Source of the DNA: Scyliorhinus canicula
Taxonomy: Eukaryota
Assembly (NCBI RefSeq): GCF_902713615.1
Contig: NC_052165.1
Span: 38,690,897 to 38,754,896, forward strand
Length of the DNA: 64,000 nt
Direction of reading: 5' to 3'
Part shown: positions 12,859 to 53,600 of the stretch, one piece after another
Layout: every line of letters begins with the position of its first letter
Numbering within the stretch: the stretch's first letter is position 1
The notes under the pieces: model-generated
Told to the model about the DNA's origin: nothing
What the model saw: the letters and a program-made list of their open reading frames with translations, nothing else
The model's database searches: none
Made by a program: the position numbers and the translations under genes

Positions 12859-13829
12859 CTCCCTATCCCTTTGACCAGCTCCTCCAGCTCAATCGGCGTC
12901 CCCAGTCCCTCCACCTGTCCCTCGTCCACCCTCGGGAATCTCAGCCGGTCCAAGAAGCGCCCCATTCCCCCCCCCCCCACCCCTCCGCTGGGGGTTCAGA
13001 CTGATACAATTCCTCATAAAAGTCCCTGAAGACCCCATTGATATCTACCCCCTTTTGCACCACATTCCCTCCCCTATCCTTAACTCCACCAACTCGCAAA
13101 CCTCCAAGGATCCACCCCTCCCATCTGGTCCATGAACCCCCTCAACGCCTTAGCCGCTGCTGGCCTCCTACCCATCTTGGACCTGGATCGATCCAGTGGC
13201 GGATCCAGCACTGTATTGAAGTCCACCCCCCCCCCCCCCCCCCCCCCCCCCCATTATCAGGCCCTCCGTCTCCAGATCTGGAATGCGGCCCAACATGCGC
13301 CGCATAAAACCCGCATCGTCCCAGTTCAGGGTGTATACGTTCACCAGCACCACCCGCTCCCCCTGCAGCTTGCTGCCCACCATCACATACCTCCCGCCGC
13401 TGTCCGCCACCACATTTGACGCCTCAAACGACACCCTCTTTCCCACCAGGATCGCCACCCCCCGATTTTTTGCATCCAGCCCTGAATGAAACACTTGGCC
13501 TACCCATCCCTTCCTCAATCTAACCTGGTCCGCCACCTTCAGGTGCGTCTCCTGAAACATGGCCACGTCCGCCTTCAGCCCCTTCAGGTGCGTAAAGACG
13601 CGGGCCCGTTTGACCGGCCCATTCAGTCCCCTCACATTCCAGGTTATCAGCCGGATCAGGGGGCTCCCTGCCCCCCTGCCCCCCCTCCCCCGCCGACTAG
13701 CCATAACCCTTCCTCTGCCCACCACTTGCCCGCGCCCCCCGCTCGGCCCGTTCCCCACGGCGGCAAACCCCCGTCTCGATCCCCCTGCATACCCCAGCTC
13801 CTTCCTGGCTATTCCAGCAGCAACACGGT

Positions 13830-13875
<46 letters not shown>

Positions 13876-15399
13876 CAAACCCCAGCTAGGACCCTCTCCA
13901 GCCGCGTTACTCCCTCCATAGTACTCCCATAAGCCAGCTGACCCCGGCAACTCCCGCCACTCCTCCGACCCCTCCCAGCGTGGGGCTACCCTTCCTCCCC
14001 AGTGCCCACCAGCAGGCTCTGCTCCTCCCCCTCCCGTTCTCACCCAGAAAAAAAGCCCGCGCTTCCCATCTCCGACCTCGCCCCATCAACCCTCAACGTG
14101 GGAAAAAGCCCGCGCTTTCCACCTGCCCAACCCCGCCTCCTCTAAAGTAGCTCCCATTGTCGGCCCAATCCCCTCGCGGAGCCCCAGCCCCCCTTACCAC
14201 CATCAGCTCCCCACACTGCAAGTCTACCCCCCTCCTCGAGCCCATCCACCGAACCCACACAAAAAGACAGTGCCCCACCCTTCCTGAAAACGACACAGAA
14301 CCAGCAGTAAACAGAAACCCCCCTTCAGAAAATAACAGTTGCATACAGACCCCCGCACCCAACCCTCAGTTTAAATCCAACATCTCGGCCTTCACAAAGG
14401 CCCACGCCTCCTCCGTGAACTCGAAGTAAAAGTGTCGGTCCTTGTAGGTGACCCACAAACGCGCCGGCTGCAACATGCCGAACGTCACTCCTTTTCTGTG
14501 CAGCACCAGCTTCGTCCGGTTGTACCCGGCCCTCCGCTTAGCCACCTCTGCACTCCAGTCCTGGTAGATCCGTACCACCGCGTTCTCCCACCTGCTACTC
14601 CGCTCCTTCTTGGCCTACCTGAGCACACACTCCCGGTCAGCGAACCTTGGAACCGCACCAGCACCGCCCGTGGCGGGTCATTCGGCTTAGGCCTTCTTGC
14701 CAATATTCTGTGGGCCCCCTCCAGCTCCAGGGGCCCTGGAAGGACCCAGCTCCCATCAGCGAATTCATCAGGACGACCACGTAGGCTCCCATGTCTGACC
14801 CCTCCAGCCCTTCCGGAAGGCCCATGATCCGCAAATTTTTCCGCCTCGATCGGTTCTCCATCTCCTCGAACCGCTCCTGCCATTTTTTACGGAGCGCCTC
14901 ATGCATCTCCACCTTTACCGCGAGGGCTGAGGCCTCATCCTCTCTTTCAGAGGCCTGTTGTCAGATCTCCCGGATTGCCACCCCCTGTGCTGTCTGGGTC
15001 TCCAGCAGCTTGTCGATGGAAGCCTTCAACGGCTCTAGTAGCTGCGCTTTGAGCTCCCGGAAGCAGCGCTGGAGAGTCTCCTGCTGCTCCTGCGCCCACT
15101 GCTTCCATGCCTCTTGCTCTCTGCCGGCCGCCATCTTGTGCTTCTTCCCTCGCTTTTGCTTTGGTGCTGCGACCGCAATCTTGCTCGCCCCACTCCTGGT
15201 CCAGGCCATATACTGCTGGGGAAATGCTGCTGACTCCTTCCCACGTCGGGAACCGTCAAAAAAGTACCGCTGGGGGCCATAAAAAGAACCCAAAAGTCCG
15301 TTCCTGGCGGGAGCTGCCGAACGTGCGGCTTAGCTCCGCATAACCGCAACCAGAAGTCCCACACGCCATGTTCTTGACACCTCACCAGGCTCATGTTTT

Positions 15400-15730
15400 G
15401 GGGCAGCATGGTAGCACAGTGGTTAGCACAGTTGCTTCACAGCTCCAGGGTCCCAGGTTCGATTCCCGCTTGGGTCACTGTCTGTATGGAGTCTGCACGG
15501 TCTCCCTGTGTCTGCATGGGTTTCGTCCGGGTGCTCCGGTTTCCTGCCACAGTCCAAAGATGTGCAGGTTAGGTGGATTGGCCATGATAAATTGCCCTTA
15601 GTGTCCAAAAAGGTTAGGTGGGGTTACTAGGATAGAGATGCGTGGGCTTAAGTGTGGTGCTCTATCCAAGGGCCGGTGCAGACTCCATGGGCCAGATGGC
15701 CTCCCTCTGCACCGTAAATTCTATGATTCC
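15400..15730 (+). mobile_element. HE1-type SINE
   Basis: Full head, core and ctatgatt tail. Confidence 0.85.
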
Positions 15731-17605: not shown

Positions 17606-19004
17606 AAAATACAAATTATCTATCTCCCTTTTTAACCTCGTTTTCTTTGAATCTTTGAATCCTTGGCCTCCTGGCACAGATTTCTAAAAAACTACATAGC
17701 TTTTCACAATCTCATTTTACAACCCATTTACACCATAGTCACTATTCTAACGTGGGGAAACATAACACCAATTTGTGAGCTCCCACAAATAGCAACAAAA
17801 TAATGACCGGGTAATCTGTTTTTATCATTAGTTTAGAGATAACCGATGGCATAATCCCGATTTCTCTTACTCCATCATGAATGGCCATGCTGCGACCCTA
17901 AATTCTGGAATTCCCTTCTGAAATCTAACACTCTCTCCTTTCAGATAATCCTTAAAATCTACTTTTTTGACCAGGTTTTGATCACCTGTCCTATTGTCAC
18001 CTTATGTGGTTTGGCGATGCCTGATAATCCTCCTGCGGAAATCCTGGGGTGCTTTGCTTAGGTAAATGCGCGATGTAAATGCAAGTTATATAGAAGGAGC
18101 TAATTTAACCAGGCTTTCTTGAGTTAAGATAAAGCACATTCTCTCTCTGCAGATGCTGCTCGACCTGCTGAGTGTTTTCCAGCAGCTACTGTTCTCATTT
18201 AACAACTGCAGTCACTGATGTTTAAAAGTGGGGTAAGAAGCAGTGTAAGCTTGATTTAAATAAATACCTAAAAAAAAAACTCTTGTGGGGCTGCAATTTG
18301 AATGTGAAAATATTTTATTTGGAAAGTCATAGGAACATAGGAATTAGGAGGTGTAGGCCATTCGGCCCTTTGAGCCTGTTCCTCCATTGGATAAGATCAT
18401 GGCTGATCGGACTGTGCTTTCAACTCCACTTTCCTGCCTGCCCCCCATAAGCCTCGACCCCCTTGTCTATCAAAAATCTGTCTAAGTCGGCCTTGAATAC
18501 ATTCAATGACCCGGCCTCCACTGCTCTTTGGGGAATGGAATTCCACACACTCATGACCATCAGAGAAAATATATTGCCCAATCTACGTCTTAAAAGAGAG
18601 GCCTCTTATTCTTAAAATGTTTTTTGCTAATTTTAGTCGTTCCCACAGGAGGAAATATCCTTCCAATATCCACCCTATTAAGTCCCCTCAGAATCTTATA
18701 TGTTTAAATAAGTTTACCTCCCATTTGTCTAAATCCCAATGGATATCGGCCCAATCTACTTATCTTACAATCTTTCTTTGTAAGATAAATCCTCCATCCC
18801 AGGAATGAGTTAAGTGAACATTCTCTGAACTGCAATTCGAGATGTAGTCTCACTAAAGCCCTGTACAGCTGCAACAAAACTTCCTTTTATATTTCATTCC
18901 CCTCACAATAAATGACAACATTCCAATTGCCTTCCTAATCCCTTGCTGCACCTGCATACTAAATATTTGCGATTCATGTACCAAGACACCCACACCCAGG
19001 TTTC

Positions 19005-20123
19005 TGTTATGATGTTGGCAGAAAAAAAACATGGAATATATACACTGAGATATAGGACTTTAAAAAGTCCCAAATTTTATATTTTAAAATGGACACAAAC
19101 CCCAAAGATGGCTGAGAATGTGCCACTGACAGGAATGACTGCAAGGTGTGTCGCTCAGGAACAATGGAATCCCTCGCTGTGTTTCCAGACAAGATGCATC
19201 TAAAAACATCCAAAGACTGATGAGCATCCCATGTAAAGTCAAAGGAATGTAATGGCTAACTCATCTAAAAGACTCTGGGTCTTTTGCCTCCCCAGACCGG
19301 CTTGTATATTCCAGGTTGGAATGTATAAAGGGGGTTAAAAGCTAGCTGAGGGAGCTGCCCAAGGATGTCTGTTTGTGTATGCTGTTGGGAAAAGCAAGGA
19401 ATATGTAAAATTCTCTCTCGACTGTGGAAGTCAACCAGCCTGCAAAAATGGATTGCAGCTGGTAAAACGAACTGAAATACCTCTGCCCAATGATGAAATA
19501 TCTGAACTGAAGAATCTACTACTTGCATGCAGGAGCCAACTATACTGGAATCAATCTGCAACGGCTGCAACACTTCATCACCCACTGCTTGCAAGTCAAA
19601 GACTGTTCTGTATAACTTTTTATTTATATTTACTTACTGTAAATTTTTACTTCTCATCCATATGAATGTAGATGCATGGGTTTTACATTTCGCCTTAACA
19701 TTTGGGTGTAAATAAACTTACTTTATCTTAACTCAAGAAAGCCTGGTTAAATTGGCTCCTTCTTAAACATAACTATTGGGTCTGGAAAAGGTATCCAATG
19801 GAAAGGGAACCTGGTTGGATTAAACCTTTGACAAAGAGTCATCGGACTCGAAACGTTAGCTCTTTTCTCTCCCTACAGATGCTGTCAGACTTGCTGAGAT
19901 TTTCCAGCATTTTCCCTTTCGTTTCATATTCCAGCATCCGTAGTAATTTGTTTTCATATAGATTAAACCTTTGTTGCTACCAGCAACAGGTGGGCTAAAT
20001 AAAGACAGAACCAATCACCTCTCCTCACAGGTGTTTGTAACAATTTGGGAAATCCCAGTTGGATGGTGACAAATTGAAGGGTCTCACCCAGATCAACAAT
20101 TTCACCTGGGGTCGGGCATAACA
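19005..20123 (+). mobile_element. Solo LTR containing a Penelope-type insertion
   Basis: TGTTATG...CATAACA termini, TATAAA near 19325, AATAAA near 19711, degenerate 4-bp TSD (tttc/tccc). Confidence 0.7.
19831..19960 (+). mobile_element. Penelope-type 3' fragment with degenerate hammerhead motif
   Basis: gagtc-atcg-gactc-GAAACGTT; 13-bp TSD GATTAAACCTTTG (19818-19830, 19961-19973); related pieces near 5365-5480, 18140-18190, 43410-43450. Confidence 0.65.
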
Positions 20124-20192
20124 TCCCTCTGTACTACCAAGTTCGGCCATCTCCATTTATTGATCTCTACTTAAAAATATACTGTAAGCAGT

Positions 20193-20345
20193 CTTACAAC
20201 ACCAGGTTAAAGTCCAATAGGTTTGTTTCCTCAGGAGCAGTGCTCCGAAAGCTGGTGTTTGAAACAAACCTGTTGGACTTTAACCGGGTGTTGTAAGATT
20301 TCTTACTGTGCTCACCCCAGTCCAACGCCGGCATCTCCACATCAT
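20193..20345 (+). mobile_element. Penelope-type pLTR fragment with inverted 5' segment
   Basis: About 37-bp inverted repeat (cttacaacacc...gtttgtttc and gaaacaaac...gttgtaag) around ggagc-agt-gctcc-GAAAGCT. Confidence 0.7.
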
Positions 20346-20424
20346 AAAAATATACTGCCTTTCCATTCTTCCTGCTAAAATGAACAAGCCAGAAAGAGGT
20401 ATCCTTGATCTGTTGAACTTTTAC

Positions 20425-20490
20425 CTGTGCAGATTTCTGCCGTTTTAAATTCTTTGATGCTGTGCCAAAGCCTTTAACTTCCAGATCCAT
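20425..20490 (-). CDS. CAPS2: CAPS2 (calcyphosine-2) first coding exon (MDLEVKGFGTASKNLKRQKSAQ)
   Basis: MDLEVKG matches the recalled CAPS2 N-terminus. Acceptor tttcag| at 20497 with 6 nt of UTR (in-frame TAA just before the ATG), donor |gtaaaa. CAPS2-GLIPR1 linkage is known from human 12q21. Confidence 0.88.
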
Positions 20491-20686
20491 TTAAAGCTGA
20501 AAAATTAAGTCAAATGTCAACAGGAATTTTTTTTAAAAAGAGAGAATATTTTTTAAAAGTTCAATCGTAGACCAGAAAACTATTGGCTAACTCGGGAAGT
20601 GAGTGAGCGTCACTACAAAGGTGATGTGACACCTTACTTATGCCTGGAAAGGCTCCTTGTACCAGACCGGGCCTGGTGTCACTCAC

Positions 20687-20830
20687 CTATTGCCGACCAA
20701 ACGCTCACCTGGCTGCTGTTCCCCGTCAATCAACCGCGTTGTCATGACCACCGCTCGCGCGCGTCAGTCTACACTTCCGGGACCAGCGGGCGCATGCGCA
20801 GCAGTGTCTGCAGCGAATCTAGGGCGTGGC
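20687..20830 (-). promoter_or_regulatory. CAPS2 CpG-rich promoter and non-coding first exon
   Basis: NRF1-type GCGCATGCGC (20790-20799), ETS CACTTCCGG (20772-20780), X-box-like GTTGTCATGACCAC (20738-20751), and two minus-strand donors (ag|gtgagc at 20709, ag|gtgagt at 20687). Confidence 0.65.
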
Positions 20831-21177
20831 AATAGCTGGACCACTGGAGTCAGGATTTCACAGAATCACATTTACAACAAATAAAAATCACATTCAATGG
20901 TGTTGGATTTGCTGTTTGCCTAATGCACAGTTGAGGCAGGCATTATATAGAGAACAAGCTCTGGTTAGACTGGAGTAACAGGCTTTAAATAAAGTGGTTC
21001 CTGGACTTGCAATGCTTCAAATCGAAAATTCTCATTCTTGTTATTAAATACCTCCATGGCCTTCCACCCCATCCCACCTACTGATCTCTGTATACTTCCT
21101 CCAGCCCTATAGCCCTCCAAGATGGTCTACCAATCAGGCCTCAGTATTTTACTTGACTATTGGCAGCGATACCCTCA

Positions 21178-21275
21178 GACCTGAGGAAGGAGTAGTGAGT
21201 AGTGCTCCGAAAGCTAGCGTTTCAAACAAACATGTTGGACTTTAACATGATGTTGTAAGACTTCTTACTGTGCTC
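21178..21275 (+). mobile_element. Penelope-type pLTR fragment with hammerhead-like core
   Basis: CTGAGGA..ggag..ctcc-GAAAGCTA followed by the same tail as 20193-20345. Confidence 0.65.
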
Positions 21276-21280
21276 TAGAT

Positions 21281-23346
21281 CAGTGCTTCTCAAAGTGTGG
21301 TACGCGTACCGGTGCCGGTACGCGAGCCATCGTCTGCCGGTACGAGGAGTGTTTCCAGAAAAGAAAGAGGCAGTAGTGATATTCAACGCCACGGGAGACT
21401 GCCGGGATATCTGACTCGGGTTTTTTTTTAATATTTTCATTTTAGTTTTATATTTATTATGGCTACATTTTTCATTTACTCACTCATGTTAAAAGTCATT
21501 GCTATACAACTAACGAATGCGATATAATGAACAGCAAAACAGTGAACTGAAAAACGCATGAAACGGTATGGCAACACCATCATGATGATGTGACGTGTAA
21601 CCTTGACAACCCTGATTTACACGTGTGGAGCAGCAGGTCAGTCAGTTAGTTACCATCAAGAAGTGGAACTGAGAGCATCATACGGATATCTGCGTGTTTG
21701 TCATTTGGGACCCCGTCCCAACCCATTGATCTGAAAATGTAAGTACTAATAATCTTAAAGGCCGGTTCACATTATCTATTCCTGTGTAAATTCGAACAAC
21801 AACAAAACGGAAACCACTGTGGTCGAGATAAAACATTTTTCTCCTTTCCGTCATCAATTGCCACGTTGAGCGGCGGCCAAACAGAGGTCCAGTTTGTCCC
21901 GGTTTTTATTGTTTTCAGACGGGGGACTGGGAGGCAGAAGTAAAATCGACCAGATGGCTTGGTCGATTCAATTCGTTCCAAGCTATTTAATGATCATTAC
22001 ATTAAACCCTGGTCAAATGAATAATTTATGGTGAAACTTTTAACTAAGTCTTTTTAAATGTTTTTATAAATTCACTGTTTTTAATATAACTATTGTATGA
22101 TGTATTTGTATTAGTATCAATTGTATTTCTCCACATAAAATTAATTAAAACAAATACATAAATAAATATTTCTCAGTAAAAGCATTCCCACTGCATTTAT
22201 TCGGCTTTCATCCTAATATCATAAATTAAGTATATACCCGGGTTATGGAATTTATATTCATTATTTTTATCCCAAATTTACAGATGGCAAAGCGAGGCCC
22301 AATGGACATGTTTATCAAACCAAGACATCCGGTTGCTGAACACACAAATAATTCTGAAGCAGATGACAACGATGTAATTGAAACCGAAGTGTTGCCAGCA
22401 AAAATAGTTCGTACTAGCTTTACTCGGAAATATGAATCCTCATACATTCAATTCGGTTTTGTAGCCACGAATGATGGGGGACTGCCAAAACCGCAGTGTG
22501 TTATTTGTGGAGATGTATACAAATACATCGTACAATAATTATATTAAAAACAGTGAATTTATAAAAACATTTAAAAAGACTTAGTTAAAAGTTTCACCAT
22601 AAATTATTCATTTGACCAGGGTTTAATGTAATGATCATTAAATAGCTTGGAACGAATTGTATCGACCAAGCCATCTGATCGATTTTACTTCTGCCTCCCA
22701 GTCCCCCGTCTGAAAACAATAAAAACCGGGACAAACTGGACCTCTGTTTGGCCGCCGCTCAACGTGGCAATTGATGACGGAAAGGAGAAAAATGTTTTAT
22801 CTCGACCACAGTGGTTTCCGTTTTGTTGTTGTTCGAATTTACACAGGAATAGATAATATGAACCGGCCTTTAAGATTATTAGTACTTACATTTTCAGATC
22901 AATGGGTTGGGACCGGGTCCCAAATGACAAACACGCAGATATCCGTATGATGCTCTCAGTTCCACTTCTTGATGGTAACTAACTGACTGACCTGCTGCTC
23001 CACACGTGTAAATCAGGGTTGTCAAGGTCACACGTCACATCATCATGATGGTGTTGCCATACCATTTCATGCGTTTTTCAGTTCACTGTTTTGCTGTTCA
23101 TTATATCGCATTCGTTAGTTGTATAGCAATGACTTTTAACATGAGTGAGTAAATGAAAAATGTTGCCATAATAAATATAAAACTAAAATGAAAATATTTT
23201 TAAAAACCCGAGTCAGATATCCCGGCAGTCTCCCGTGGCGTTGAATATCACTACTGTCTCTTTCTTTTCTGGAAACACTCCACGTACCGGCAGACGATGG
23301 CCCGCGTACCGGCACCGGTACACGTACCACACTTTGAGAAGCACTG
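21281..23346. mobile_element. Fold-back non-autonomous hAT (Buster/Charlie-type) element made of two inverted left ends
   Basis: Termini CAGTGCTTCTCAAAGTGTGG...CCACACTTTGAGAAGCACTG; 8-bp TSD CTCTAGAT (21273-21280, 23347-23354); arms 21281-22111 and 22517-23346; spacer encodes a Buster transposase N-terminus. Confidence 0.93.
22284..22538 (+). pseudogene. Truncated Buster/ZBED5-like transposase N-terminus (partial BED finger)
   Basis: RKYESSYIQFGF...PKPQCVICG is a Buster zf-BED signature. Preceded by the acceptor tttacag|ATG and cut off at the arm junction. Confidence 0.85.
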
Positions 23347-23817
23347 CTCTAGATCATAAGCTTTAGAATTCCCATGTAGGCTCTGCATCTCTCCTTTTAA
23401 GAAAGTCCTTAAAAAGGAACTTTGATGTTGACCACCCGTCTGAATATCTGCTTGTATTGGTACCAGATTTGTTTGATAAAAGTCCATCAAATCTGCCTTA
23501 CGATGTTAAAAGCAATAAATAAATGCAAGTTTTTGGCCTCAAATTTGGAAAAAAATTACACTAGAAATTTGTATGATCACAGTAAAATGTTCACGTTTTG
23601 TCAGTCCTTGCAATCGACAGGGAGCACATAGAGGGTGATCCATTTTGGACTGAGACGAGGAAAAATTTCTTCAAAGTGTCTCCTCCAGAGTTATGGTTGC
23701 TCAGTCATTAGTGTATTCAAGACATTGGTCAATAGATTTTTGCATACTAAGGGAATTAAAGAATATATGATAGTGCAGGAAGGCAGAGTTGAAGTAGATG
23801 ATTAGTCATGATTTTGC

Positions 23818-24090
23818 TGGGTGGCACAGTGGTTAGCACAGTGCCCAGGATCTGGGTCCGATTCCGACCTTCGGCGACTGTGTGTGGTGTTTGCACATTC
23901 TTTGTGTCTGCATGGGTTTTCTCCGGGTGTTCTGGTTTCCTTCCATAGTCCAAAGATGTGCAGGTTAGGTGGATTGAATATGCTAAATTGTCCCGTGGGG
24001 TTATTGGGCCTAGGTTAGGGTTCTCTTTCGGAGAGTCGGTGCAGACTTGATGAGTCGTAAGGCCTCCTTCTGGACTGTAGGGATTCTATG
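23818..24090 (+). mobile_element. HE1-type SINE
   Basis: Head, core and tail similar to other copies. Confidence 0.8.
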
Positions 24091-24439
24091 ATAAGAGGCT
24101 CCTATTCCAACTATTTCTTGCACTCCCATTCTTTTAGCTATTAGTTTTTTCACTTGTTCTCTGCTCTGATGAAGAATCAAATTCAAATCACTAATCTGAC
24201 CTTCCTCTTTGCAGGTAATCATCAATCTCCTGTGTACTTCCAGCAATTTTTCAAATGGAATATGAAGCTAGACTGCATGAGAAACTAACTGTGTCTGGAA
24301 GGTGGGCAGATTGGGACTGTAAGATCACCACTGAAATGAATAATTTTGTGGTCTGTGCAATTTCCTTCTGGTGACTTTTAATTTGGGTATGGTTTACTCA
24401 AATATTATGCAAGAAATGTTACGTTCTTAAGTAAATTAC

Positions 24440-25258
24440 TACCTAATCTGGTTCGGATTCAACCCGTCCTGCTTGTACAAGTCCCACCTTCCCCAGAATG
24501 CGCTCCAATTATCCAAATACCTGAAGCCCTCCCTCCTACACCATTCCTGCAGTCACATATTCAGCTGCACTCTCTCCCTATTCCTAGCCTCGCTATCACA
24601 TGGCACTGGCAGCAAACCAGAGATGACAACTCTGTCTGTCCTGGCTTTTAACTTCCAGCCTAACTCCCTAAACTTGTTTATTACATCCACACCCCTTTTA
24701 TAGTGTTCAATTCTGGTTGCCACACTACCAGAAGGATGTGGAGGCTTTAGAGAGGGTGCAGAAGAGATTTACCAGGATGTTGACTGGTATGGAGGGCATT
24801 AGCTATGAGGAGAGGTTGAATAAATTTGGTTTGTTCTCACTGGAACGATGGAGGTAGAGGGCTGACCTGATAGAGGTCTACAAAATTATGAGGGGCATAG
24901 ACAGAGTGGATAGTCAGAGGCTTCCCAGGGTGGAGGGGTCAATTACTAGGGGGCATAGGTTTAAAGTGCGAGGGGCAAGGTTTAGAGGAGATGTATGAGG
25001 CAAGTTTTTTTTTTTTTTTTTTTTTTTTACACAGAGGGTAGTGGGTGCCTGAAACTCGCTGCCAGAGGAGGTGGTGGAAGCAGGGACGATAGTGACATTT
25101 AAGGGGCATCTTGACAAATACATGAATAGGATGGGAATAGAGGGATACGGACCCAGGAAGTGTAGAAGATTGTAGTTTAGTCGGGCAGCATGGTCGGCCC
25201 GGGCTTGGAGGGCCGAAGGGCCTGTTACTGTGCTGTACTTTTCTTTGTTCTTTGTTCT
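24440..25258 (+). mobile_element. CR1 fragments: inverted internal piece (about 24440-24700) joined to a plus-strand 3' end
   Basis: QFWxPHYQKDVEALERVQKRFTRML-type sequence and (ctttgtt)n tail. Confidence 0.75.
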
Positions 25259-50614: not shown

Positions 50615-53600
50615 AAGAACAAATAAAATTACAGCACAGGAACAGGCCCTTCAGCCCTCCCAGCTTGCGCTGATCCAGATCCTTTATCTAAACCTGTTGC
50701 CTATTTTCCAAGGATCTACTTCTCTCTGTTTCCCGCCCGTTCATATATCTGTCCAGATGCATCTTAAATGATGCTATCGTGCCCGCCTCTACCACCTCCG
50801 CTGACAAAGCGTTCCAGGCACCCACCACCCTCTGCGTAAAAAACTTTCCACGCACATCTCCCTTAAACTTTCCCCCCTCACCCCTTGAAATCGTGACCCC
50901 TTGTAATTGACACCCCCACTCTTGGAAAAAGCTTGTCGCTATCCACCCTGTCCATACCTCTCATAATTTTGTAGACCTCAATCAGGTCCCCTCTCAACCT
51001 CCGTCTTTCCAAAGAAAACAATCCTAATCTACTCAACCTTTCTTCATAGCTAGCACCCTCCATACCAGGCAACATCCTGGTGAACCTCCTCTGCACCCTC
51101 TCTAAAGCATCCACATCCTTCTGGTAATGTGGCGACCAGAACTGCACGCAGTATTCCAAATGTGGCCTAACCAAAGTCCTATACAACTGTAACATGACCT
51201 GCTGACTCTTGTACTCAATACGCTGTCCGATGAAGGCAAGCATGCTGTATGCCTTCTTGACCACTCTATCGACCTGCGTTGCCACCTTCAGGGTACAATA
51301 CACTTGAATTCCCAGATCTCTCTGTACATCAATTTTCCCCAGGAATCTTCCATTAACCATATAGTCCGCTCTTGAATTAGATCTTCCAAAATGCATCACC
51401 TCGCATTTGCCTAGATTGAACTCCATCTGCCATTTCTCTGCCCAACTCTCCAATCTATCTATATTTTGCTGTATTCTCTGACAGTCCTCCTCGCTATCTG
51501 CAACTTCACCAATCTTAGTGTCATCTGCAAACTTGCTAATCAGACCACCTATACCTTCCTCCAGATCATTTATGTATATCACAAACACCAGTGATCCGAG
51601 CACAGATCCCTGTGGAACACCACTAGTCACCTTTCTCCATTTTGAGACACTCCCTTCCACCACTACTCTCTGTCTCCTGTTGCCGAGCCAGTTCTTTATC
51701 CATCTAGCTAGTACACCCTGAACCCCATACGACTTCACTTTTTCCATCAACCTGCCATGGGAAACTTTATCAAATGCCTTACTGAAGTCCATGTATATGA
51801 CATCTACAGCCCTTCCCTCATCAATTAACTTTGTCACTTCCTCAAAGAATTCTATTAAGTTTGTAAGACATGACCTTCCTTGCACAAAACCATGCTGCTT
51901 ATCACTGATAAGTCTATTTATTCCAAATGTGAATAGATCCTATCCCTCAGTATCTTCTCCAACAGTTTGCCTACCACTGACGTCAAGCTCACAGGTCTAT
52001 AATTCCCTGGATTATCCCTGCTACCCTTCTTAAACAAAGGAACAACATTAGCAATTCTCCAGTCCTCTGGGACCTCACCCATGCTCAAGGATGCTGCAAA
52101 GATATCTGTTAAGGCCCCTGCTATTTCGTCCCTCGCTTCCCTCAGTAACCTGGGATAGATCCCATCCGGTCCTGGGGACTTGTCCACCTTAATGCCTTTT
52201 AGAATACCCAAAACCTCCCCTTTCCTTATGCCGACAAGACCTAGAGTATTTAAACATCCATCCCTAGCCTCAACCTCCGTCATGTCCCTCTCCTTGGTGA
52301 ATACCGATGCAAAGTACTCATTAAGAATCTCACTAATTTCCTCTGATTCCACGCATAAATTCCCTATTTAGTCTTTGAATGGGCCAATCCTTTCTCTAGT
52401 TACCCTCTTGCTCCTTATATATGAATAAAAGGCTTTGGGATTTTCCTTAACCCTGTTAGCCAAAGATATTTCATGACCCCTTTTAGCCCTCTTTATTGCG
52501 CGTTTGAGATTTGTCCTACTTTCCAGATATTCCTCCAAAGCTTCATCAGTTTTGAGTCGCCTCGATCCTATGTATGCTTCCTTTTTTATCTTAGCTAGTC
52601 TCACAATTCCACCCGTCATCCATGGATCCCTAATCTTGCCATTTCTATCTCTCATTTTCACAGGGACATGTCTGTCCTGCACTCTAATCAACCTTTCCTT
52701 AAAAGACTCCCACATTTCAAATGTGGATTTACCCTTAAACAGCTGCTCCCAATCCACATTCCCGAGCTCCTGCCAAATTATGTTATACTTGGCCTTTCCC
52801 CAATTTAGCACTCTTCCTTTAGGACCACTCTCGTCTTTGTCCATGCGTATTCTAAAACTTACGGAATTGTGATCGCTATTCCCAAAGTAATCACTGACTG
52901 AAACTTCAACCACCTGGCCGGGATCATTCCCCAATACCAGGTCCAGTATGGCCCCTTCCCGAGTTGGACTATTTACATACTGCTCTAAAAAACTCTCCTG
53001 GATGCTCCTTACAAATTCTGCTCCATCTACGTCTCCAACACTACATGAGTCCCATTCAATGTTGGGGAAGTTAAAATCTCCCATCACAACCACCCTATTG
53101 CTCCTACATTGTTCTATAATCTGTCTACATACTTGTACCTCTACTTCACGCTCACTTTGGGAGGCCTATAGTAAAGTCCCAAGAATGTTACTGCACCCTT
53201 CCTATTTCTTAGCTCTATCCATATTACCTCAGTGCTCGAATCCTCCATCGTGCCCTCCTTAATCACAGCTGTGATATCATCTCTAACCAATAATGCAACT
53301 CCTCCGCCCCTTTTACCTCCCTCTCTATCCCCCCTGAAGCATCTATACCCTGGGATATTTAGTTGCCAGTCTTGCCCATCCCTCAACCAAGTCTCAGTAA
53401 TACCAATAACATCATTTTCCCAGGTACTAATCCAAGCCCTAAGTTCATCTGCCTTGCCTGCTACACTTCTCGCATTAAAACAAATGCACTTCAGACCACC
53501 TGTCCCTTTGCGATCATCATCTCTTCCCTGTCTACTCTTCCCCTTAGTCACATTGAGTTTATTTTCTAGTACCTTACTGGCTTTAGTTGCTCCATCTTTA

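What the first reader, a model, noticed from the sequence alone, without database searches (positions are those of the whole stretch)
21273..23354. Giant fold-back hAT element built from two left ends that appears to have transposed as a unit
Seen: 21281-22111 and 22517-23346 are ~830-bp inverted copies with about 17 differences counted by eye (~2%). The 405-bp spacer carries the start of a Buster/ZBED5-type transposase and stops mid BED finger exactly where the right arm begins. Both outer ends are flanked by the same 8-bp TSD CTCTAGAT. Established: Buster/Charlie hATs make 8-bp TSDs with a central TA, have short TIRs, and generally have asymmetric left and right ends. Inference: a template switch replaced the rest of the element with an inverted copy of the 5' end. 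A local in-situ duplication would have left an inverted flank rather than a direct TSD, so this left-left element was probably inserted by transposase. It is a candidate intermediate in the birth of palindromic MITE/fold-back families.
Basis: partly seen in the sequence, partly recalled or inferred. Interest (0 to 1): 0.85.

Follow-up and report, generated by a model that had tools for sequence, protein, structure and literature searches.

The report
Dead shark transposon with two left ends
This is a real 2.1-kb broken copy of a cut-and-paste (hAT/Buster) transposon in a catshark-like genome whose right half was replaced by an inverted copy of its left end; such rearranged copies are already known from other transposons, and nothing here shows that this one ever moved in its present shape.

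Summary
Arms 21281-22111 and 22517-23346 are inverted copies with 17 differing alignment columns. The 405-bp spacer carries the first 77 codons of a Buster-type transposase, cut between the CxxC and HxxxH halves of the BED finger. CTCTAGAT flanks both ends.

Related copies fetched from a sea turtle genome, two sequencing-run assemblies and a metagenome contig are 85-93% identical. They read straight through both arm boundaries. The one complete relative has different left and right ends that share only a 14-16 bp terminal repeat. So the family is natively asymmetric, and this copy has two left ends, of 1,236 and 830 bp, joined head to head at a blunt junction.

The claim that it transposed as a unit is not compelled:
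- Repair after an excision attempt leaves the flanks and the duplication in place, and the shared 14-bp terminal repeat gives homology for a switch between ends.
- Maize Ac, also a hAT element, is reported to make insertions holding two inverted 5' fragments, with 8-bp duplications reported at their borders.
- Six of the eight duplicated bases are palindromic.

Copy number in this genome could not be tested. This is a new member of a known kind, of modest interest. It could make a roughly 510-bp hairpin RNA, like maize Mu killer; that is untested.

The parts
21273..21280 (.). Left copy of the 8-bp target-site duplication CTCTAGAT
   Evidence: It is identical to 23347-23354. The relatives are flanked by CTCTAGAG (turtle) and CTCTACAG (L004).
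21281..21294 (+). 14-bp terminal inverted repeat CAGTGCTTCTCAAA, the only stretch that left-type and right-type ends of the family share
21281..22111 (+). Left arm, the native left end of the parent: terminal repeat, subterminal CCGGTAC/GTACCGG motifs at 21306-21312, 21315-21321 and 21337-21343, non-coding 5' region, and a donor-like GTAAGT at 21739
   Evidence: Homologous to the left end of the complete relative L004 (85% over 21273-21366, 80% over 21649-21760) and to L003 (85-93%). L002 reads through 22111/22112 without a break. The splice sites are inferred from sequence only.
22112..22516 (+). Spacer: the uninterrupted continuation of the parent's 5' region (intron-like tail ending in ttacag) and the start of the coding region
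   Evidence: Colinear with L001, L002, L003, L004 and L005 at 85-93%.
22284..22516 (+). Truncated transposase ORF: 77 codons plus 2 bases, ending CVICGDV. The CxxC half of the BED finger is kept and the HxxxH half is lost
22516..22517 (.). Head-to-head junction. The parent reads GGAGATGT then GTTGGC; here GGAGATGT is followed by ATACAAATAC, the reverse complement of the sequence ending at 22111. It is blunt, with no microhomology
22517..23346 (-). Right arm: an inverted second copy of left-end positions 1-831. It carries the same three subterminal motifs at 23284-23290, 23306-23312 and 23315-23321
   Evidence: It shows no similarity to the family's right end beyond the 14-bp terminal repeat.
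23347..23354 (.). Right copy of the 8-bp target-site duplication CTCTAGAT

Best explanation
This is a dead, non-autonomous derivative of a Buster-family hAT transposon, made of two left-end fragments joined head to head: 1,236 bp on the + strand and 830 bp inverted. That much is shown. The most likely history is inferred. An ordinary left-right copy inserted at CTCTAGAT and made the 8-bp duplication. After a later excision attempt or break, repair copying from the sister copy went wrong. The strand primed from the right flank copied the 14-bp terminal repeat and then continued on the left end, which carries the same 14 bp. It stopped after 830 bp and was joined bluntly to the strand coming from the left flank, which had reached codon 77. 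The flanks and the duplication never changed. The product cannot make transposase. Each arm carries the element's presumed 5' leader region, and the two arms face each other, so transcription would give a hairpin or double-stranded RNA with a stem of about 510 bp. That is a possible, untested trigger for small-RNA silencing of the family. Otherwise it is a neutral relic.
For: Structure. Both termini are of the left-end type and the family is asymmetric: in the complete relative L004 the left end matches the shark arm, the right end matches the turtle right end, and the two ends share only 14-16 bp. Relatives read through both arm boundaries, so the extent of the right arm was set by the same event that cut the ORF. 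The junction is blunt, as expected when two broken or aborted ends are joined. An in-situ origin needs no left-left mobilisation. It is one step shorter than 'formed elsewhere, then moved', and it preserves the direct duplication automatically. Published Buster elements have 14-16 bp terminal repeats, 8-bp duplications and need distinct subterminal regions at each end (PMC12637253). Hairpin potential: predicted RNA fold of 21600-23027 at -1010 kcal/mol.
Against: No full-length copy or empty site at this locus was seen in any other individual or species. A switch through only 14 bp of homology is plausible but is not demonstrated for this family. All three left-end CCGGTAC-type motifs are present at both termini, and the turtle right end carries the same motif. 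Transposase might therefore accept a left-left substrate, which would make the 'moved as a unit' rival viable. The sequence of this single locus cannot tell the rival histories apart. There are no RNA or small-RNA data.
Confidence: 0.45

Rival explanations
1. The left-left fold-back formed at another locus and was then excised and integrated here by the family's transposase using two left ends, which made the CTCTAGAT duplication.
For: There is a perfect direct 8-bp duplication of the family's preferred target. Both termini carry an intact terminal repeat and three subterminal CCGGTAC/GTACCGG motifs. Six of the eight such motifs in the 64-kb window lie within 63 bp of the two termini, and the motif also occurs in the turtle right end. 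From my own knowledge, palindromic non-autonomous hAT families exist.
Against: It needs one more step than the in-situ model. No second copy of the junction was found anywhere I could search, although this genome itself was not searchable. Published Buster work shows that end-specific subterminal regions matter (PMC12637253). From memory, and not checked here, Ac elements with two identical ends do not transpose.
Confidence: 0.3
2. Aberrant (alternative) transposition. Transposase engaged ends that were still attached to chromatid DNA. After insertion at CTCTAGAT, re-replication or breakage left two left-end fragments of unequal length, and these were fused. The composite insertion was therefore born at this site.
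For: Maize Ac, also a hAT element, is reported to produce this kind of product: two fractured Ac fragments, both from the 5' terminus, inverted and of unequal size, with perfect 8-bp duplications reported at the borders of the composite insertions, and dsRNA and siRNAs that silence Ac (bioRxiv 10.1101/2020.01.07.897926). The blunt junction fits a fusion of broken ends.
Against: The maize cases arise from two closely linked elements and come with large flanking duplications or deletions. No flank duplication is seen within 20500-24200, and the right flank is unique in the window. The model requires a complex chromosome repair.
Confidence: 0.15
3. The family, or a shark subfamily of it, natively has terminal inverted repeats of about 830 bp, and this copy is a simple internal deletion.
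For: None found. It cannot be fully excluded, because no full-length copy from this genome was available.
Against: The complete relative L004 has no long inverted repeat between its ends. The turtle right end is unrelated to the arm beyond 14 bp. The right arm starts inside codon 78, so a deletion would have to end exactly at the inner edge of a long repeat. L002 and L003 run straight through the junction into the rest of the transposase.
Confidence: 0.03
4. Assembly artefact: a palindromic chimeric read or a collapsed repeat.
For: Long palindromes are a known failure mode of long-read assemblies (my own knowledge).
Against: The arms differ at 17 columns, with derived states in both arms relative to outgroups. 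The unit is embedded in unique flanks with a precise 8-bp duplication of the family's preferred target.
Confidence: 0.03

Closest known systems
Composite insertions of maize Ac (hAT) made by alternative transposition (Wang et al., bioRxiv 10.1101/2020.01.07.897926)
   Same: Same superfamily. Two fragments, both from the 5' (left) terminus, inverted relative to each other and of unequal length, with 8-bp target duplications reported at the borders. They can be transcribed into dsRNA.
   Different: The maize products are 6-8 kb, arise from two closely linked elements and come with megabase-scale duplications. Their fusion points could not be sequenced. Here the unit is 2.07 kb, the junction is read to the base, and no flank rearrangement is visible. 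Silencing was shown in maize and is only conjecture here.
Mu killer of maize (PMC3440606)
   Same: [quoted passage not shown]
   Different: It belongs to a different superfamily (Mutator), is in a plant, and acts through a plant-specific RNA-directed methylation pathway. Its hairpin is driven by read-through from a flanking gene. No functional evidence exists here.
Autonomous Buster hAT elements (TcBuster, AnBuster and others; PMC12637253)
   Same: 8-bp duplication with a central TA, a 14-16 bp terminal repeat beginning CAG, and a transposase with an N-terminal BED finger. Subterminal regions are needed for activity and differ between the two ends.
   Different: This copy keeps only 77 codons, has no right end, and carries 830-bp inverted arms.
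Palindromic MITEs and microhomology-mediated miniaturisation of DNA transposons (e.g. PMC3814204)
   Same: A non-autonomous derivative made by faulty repair, with symmetric ends.
   Different: It is 2.07 kb rather than under about 800 bp. No evidence of amplification was obtained. The junction shows no microhomology.
Foldback (FB) elements and Galileo-type long-repeat elements (PMC4168063)
   Same: Long inverted arms around a short centre.
   Different: From my own knowledge, FB arms are built of tandem subrepeats; no tandem repeat lies in 21273-23354. Galileo belongs to the P superfamily and has long repeats natively. Here the long arms are secondary.

Membership tests
hAT superfamily, Buster family | 8-bp target-site duplication, with a central TA in Buster (nnnTAnnn) | tested here: met
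   CTCTAGAT lies on both sides. Relatives have CTCTAGAG and CTCTACAG. The 8-bp duplication is stated in PMC12637253. The nnnTAnnn consensus is from memory.
hAT superfamily, Buster family | Short terminal inverted repeats (about 14-16 bp) with distinct subterminal regions at the two ends | tested here: met
   Met for the family: in L004 the left and right ends share only 14-16 bp. This copy departs from it secondarily, since both of its ends are left ends.
hAT superfamily, Buster family | Transposase with an N-terminal BED finger, an RNase-H-like catalytic core and a C-terminal hAT dimerisation region | tested here: inconclusive
   The window keeps only 77 residues, and Pfam finds nothing in them. 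In colinear relatives the downstream ORFs hit zf-BED, DUF4371, FAM200-ZBED5_RNase-like and FAM200-GTF2IRD2-like. The N-terminus aligns at 49% identity to a 1,325-residue protein whose N-terminal part I read as SCAN plus integrase and which I take to be SCAND3/ZBED9-like; that identification is from memory. No catalytic residues could be examined in this copy.
Foldback (FB) elements | Long inverted arms composed of tandem subrepeats | tested here: not met
   No tandem repeat lies within 21273-23354. The arms are the unique 5' region of a hAT element.
MITE | Small size (under about 800 bp) and many copies | tested here: not met
   The size criterion fails at 2,066 bp. Copy number in this genome could not be measured. 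There is no second copy in the window or in the collections I could search.
Mu killer / Ac composite-insertion type silencer locus | Inverted duplication of the 5' terminal region and of part of the transposase gene of an otherwise active family | tested here: met
   Searches show the structure. Whether the family is or was active in this genome is unknown.
Mu killer / Ac composite-insertion type silencer locus | Transcribed into hairpin or double-stranded RNA that yields small RNAs and represses the family | not testable with these tools
   Only the thermodynamic potential was computed. No expression or small-RNA data were available.

The most novel reading that the evidence does not exclude
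The left-left unit is more than a relic. Either it was mobilised by transposase acting on two left ends and is the founder of a fold-back family in sharks, or its two facing 5' regions make a roughly 510-bp hairpin RNA that feeds small-RNA silencing of a horizontally acquired Buster family. The second case would be a vertebrate counterpart of maize Mu killer and of the Ac composite insertions.
Probability: 0.2. Interest if true: 0.6.

Novelty: new member of a known kind. Interest (0 to 1): 0.3.

Why it matters
It gives a base-resolved example in a cartilaginous fish of how a cut-and-paste transposon with unlike ends can become a symmetric element with long inverted arms. If further copies with the same junction exist, it would show that a Buster transposase accepts two left ends, and it would catch a fold-back family at birth. 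If it is transcribed, it is a candidate natural hairpin trigger for transposon silencing in a vertebrate. As a single locus with no copy-number or RNA evidence, it is an instructive but ordinary product of faulty transposon repair.

Tried and rejected
- Pfam on the 77-residue N-terminus gave no hit. A first attempt used the wrong reading frame.
- Looking for other copies of the junction: the 97-aa ORF that crosses it has no identical or near-identical protein in the 5.8-billion-protein collection and no encoding contig. An exact 22-mer across the junction found nothing in the metagenome contigs.
- These blanks say little, because the shark genome itself is not in any searchable collection. The best hits, at 79-90%, come from other hosts.
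- Viral contigs: the coding pattern gave 0 hits. The 17-mer terminus gave 3 hits, which blastn extended to 18-20 bp. Two of them are the same phage sequence. I rejected all three as chance.
- The scan's own notes searched by sequence or by words gave no other left-left hAT in this genome.
- The representative-protein search found mostly short ORF fragments and no full-length transposase of this family, so a full-length parent from this genome could not be recovered.
- Rfam found nothing in 19000-25000. The bacterial promoter and terminator scan is not meaningful for a vertebrate.
- I looked for microhomology or a priming hairpin at the junction. The GATGTAT/ATACATC mini-palindrome there is just a by-product of GATGT occurring both at the end of the ORF stub and near the inner end of the arm. 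The junction itself is blunt.
- A literature search for hAT transposition with two left ends returned nothing relevant.

Full report
**What is there**

The window is vertebrate DNA rich in LINE fragments. Earlier notes of this scan call the genome a catshark.

Between 21273 and 23354 lies a 2,066-bp unit flanked on both sides by CTCTAGAT. Its outer parts, 21281-22111 and 22517-23346, are inverted copies of 831 and 830 bp. They differ in 17 alignment columns: 13 isolated substitutions, plus 3 mismatches and 1 gap in one T/A tract. The 20-bp terminus occurs nowhere else in the 64 kb.

The 405-bp centre ends in an ORF that starts at 22284 and reads 77 codons up to CVICGDV.

**What family it belongs to**

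The N-terminal peptide finds short ORF products at 58-90% identity. They come from a sea turtle genome (Natator depressus), from assemblies of public sequencing runs, from metagenomes, from a microsporidian and from an octopus.

These relatives continue after GDV with LAN..KPS.LKRHLNTKH. In L002 that stretch scores as the second half of Pfam zf-BED. ORFs further downstream in the related loci hit DUF4371, FAM200-ZBED5_RNase-like and FAM200-GTF2IRD2-like.

- the 8-bp duplication with a central TA;
- the CAG-initial 14-bp terminal repeat;
- the published properties of Buster elements: 14-16 bp terminal repeats, 8-bp duplications and required subterminal regions (PMC12637253).

The copy in the window keeps the CxxC half of the BED finger and loses the HxxxH half.

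**Is the long inverted repeat native?**

No. I fetched DNA for five related loci.
- L002, L003 and L005 (run assemblies and a metagenome assembly) are colinear at 85-93% with the parts of the arm and spacer they overlap.
- L002 runs without interruption across the left arm/spacer boundary at 22111/22112, and L001, L002 and L003 run across 22516 into the rest of the transposase.
- L004, a 25-kb metagenome contig, holds a complete decayed relative of 3.57 kb. Its left end matches the shark arm (85% over the first 94 bp including the duplication; 80% and 85% further in). Its right end matches the right end of the turtle copy at 79-91%.
- Within L004 the two ends share only a terminal repeat of about 14-16 bp, and no long inverted repeat links them.
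- The turtle right end is likewise unrelated to the shark arm beyond CAGTGCTTCTCAAA.

Both termini in the window are therefore of the left-end type. In addition, the right arm begins inside codon 78, so its inner edge was set by the same event that cut the gene.

The unit is best described as two left-end fragments, 1,236 bp and 830 bp, fused head to head.

**The junction**

The parent sequence reads GGAGATGT followed by GTTGGC. The window reads GGAGATGT followed by the reverse complement of the sequence ending at 22111. Extending either partner by one base gives a mismatch, so the joint is blunt with no microhomology. That fits end joining of two broken or aborted strands at least as well as a homology-guided template switch.

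**Is it real?**

Where outgroup copies allow the differences to be polarised, derived states lie in both arms. The unit is embedded in unique flanks, with a duplication that matches the family's target preference: CTCTAGAG in the turtle and CTCTACAG in L004. An assembly artefact is unlikely.

**Did it transpose as a unit?**

That is true only for a fold-back that copies out through the end into the flank. At least two other routes keep the direct duplication.

1. *Gap repair in place.* After an ordinary resident copy excises, both flanks with their duplications stay put and are extended by copying from the sister copy.
   - The strand primed from the right flank first copies the 14-bp terminal repeat.
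   - The left end carries the same 14 bp, so the strand can re-anneal there and continue into left-end sequence.
   - Joining it to the strand coming from the left flank gives exactly this structure.
2. *Aberrant transposition.* In maize Ac, also a hAT element, alternative transposition followed by re-replication, fork abortion and fusion is reported to give composite insertions. They contain two fractured Ac fragments, both from the 5' terminus, inverted and of unequal length, with perfect 8-bp duplications reported at the insertions' borders (bioRxiv 10.1101/2020.01.07.897926).

The core TCTAGA is also palindromic, so a direct and an inverted flank differ only at positions 1 and 8.

The sequence of this locus cannot separate the three histories. 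Only copy number can, or the state of the same site in relatives, and I could not search this genome (and the scan's notes).

My odds are:
- in-situ repair 0.45, the shortest route;
- moved as a preformed unit 0.30;
- Ac-like composite insertion 0.15;
- native long repeat or artefact about 0.03 each;
- the remaining 0.04 is unassigned.

In favour of possible left-left mobility: each terminus carries three CCGGTAC/GTACCGG motifs within 63 bp. That is six of the eight such motifs in the whole window. The same motif occurs twice in the turtle right end. It is probably the subterminal binding motif common to both ends. That is an inference.

**What it does**

It cannot encode a transposase.

The left end contains a donor-like GTAAGT at 21739. 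An acceptor-like ttacag lies immediately before the ATG, in the spacer, and is conserved in the relatives' ORF read-through (NLQMAKRG). This suggests a non-coding first exon and an intron. That is inferred, with no RNA evidence.

If the left end carries the element's promoter, the two arms drive convergent transcription, and a read-through transcript folds into a stem of about 510 bp (-1010 kcal/mol over 21600-23027). This is the architecture of maize Mu killer (PMC3440606) and of the Ac composite insertions that generate siRNAs. A silencing role in a shark is possible but wholly untested. The default reading is a neutral relic.

**Novelty**

Inverted-duplication derivatives of DNA transposons, and symmetric non-autonomous elements, are well known. 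This is a new, cleanly resolved member of that kind in a cartilaginous fish. Interest is modest unless further copies or small RNAs are found.

**Side observations**

- The family is about 90% identical at the DNA level between this shark-like genome and a sea turtle. The non-coding part (92%) is as similar as the coding part (89%). That points to horizontal transfer.
- CpG observed/expected is about 1.0 in the element against about 0.3 in its flanks.

Noticed in passing
window 22166-22516 versus L001 9921-10272 (Natator depressus), L002, L003, L005 and L004: The element is 85-93% identical at the DNA level to copies in a sea turtle genome, two sequencing-run assemblies and two metagenome assemblies. 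Between shark and turtle the intron-like part (92.4%) is as conserved as the coding part (89.3%). N-terminal peptides at 64-75% identity are also annotated in a microsporidian (Dictyocoela muelleri) and in Octopus vulgaris. This pattern suggests horizontal transfer of this Buster family among distant, partly marine hosts.
   Followed up: partly
window 21281-23346 versus flanks 19000-20500 and 23355-25000: CpG observed/expected is 1.05 in the arms and 0.90 in the spacer, against 0.28-0.31 in the flanking DNA. Only 2 of the 13 isolated substitutions between the arms are CpG transitions. The element looks young, recently arrived, or unmethylated in the germ line.
   Followed up: no
window 20660-20830: A CpG-island-like stretch (63% G+C, CpG observed/expected 1.01) lies about 450 bp upstream of the insertion. 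Another first-stage note on this stretch proposes a host promoter here (CAPS2). I did not test the gene assignment.
   Followed up: no
window 20180-20345 and 21203-21275: There are copies of an abundant shark interspersed repeat (..gtgctccgaaagct..gttggactttaac..cttactgtgctc..). The hAT unit sits at the point where the 21203-21275 copy stops matching the 20235-20345 copy, so no empty-site sequence could be inferred from it.
   Followed up: partly
L001 11169-12420: The turtle copy is truncated at its 5' end, lacking about 600 bp of the left end. It carries a roughly 1.25-kb insertion that encodes a reverse transcriptase domain.
   Followed up: no
L004 8959-8966 and 12534-12541: The duplication of the complete relative reads CTCTACAG on the left and CTACAGCA on the right. 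This fits a 2-bp CT slippage deletion in the right copy.
   Followed up: no
window 8463-15400 and 50878-53100: These are LINE-type ORFs (RVT_1, endonuclease/exonuclease/phosphatase domains) in G+C-rich blocks with long poly-G and poly-C runs.
   Followed up: no
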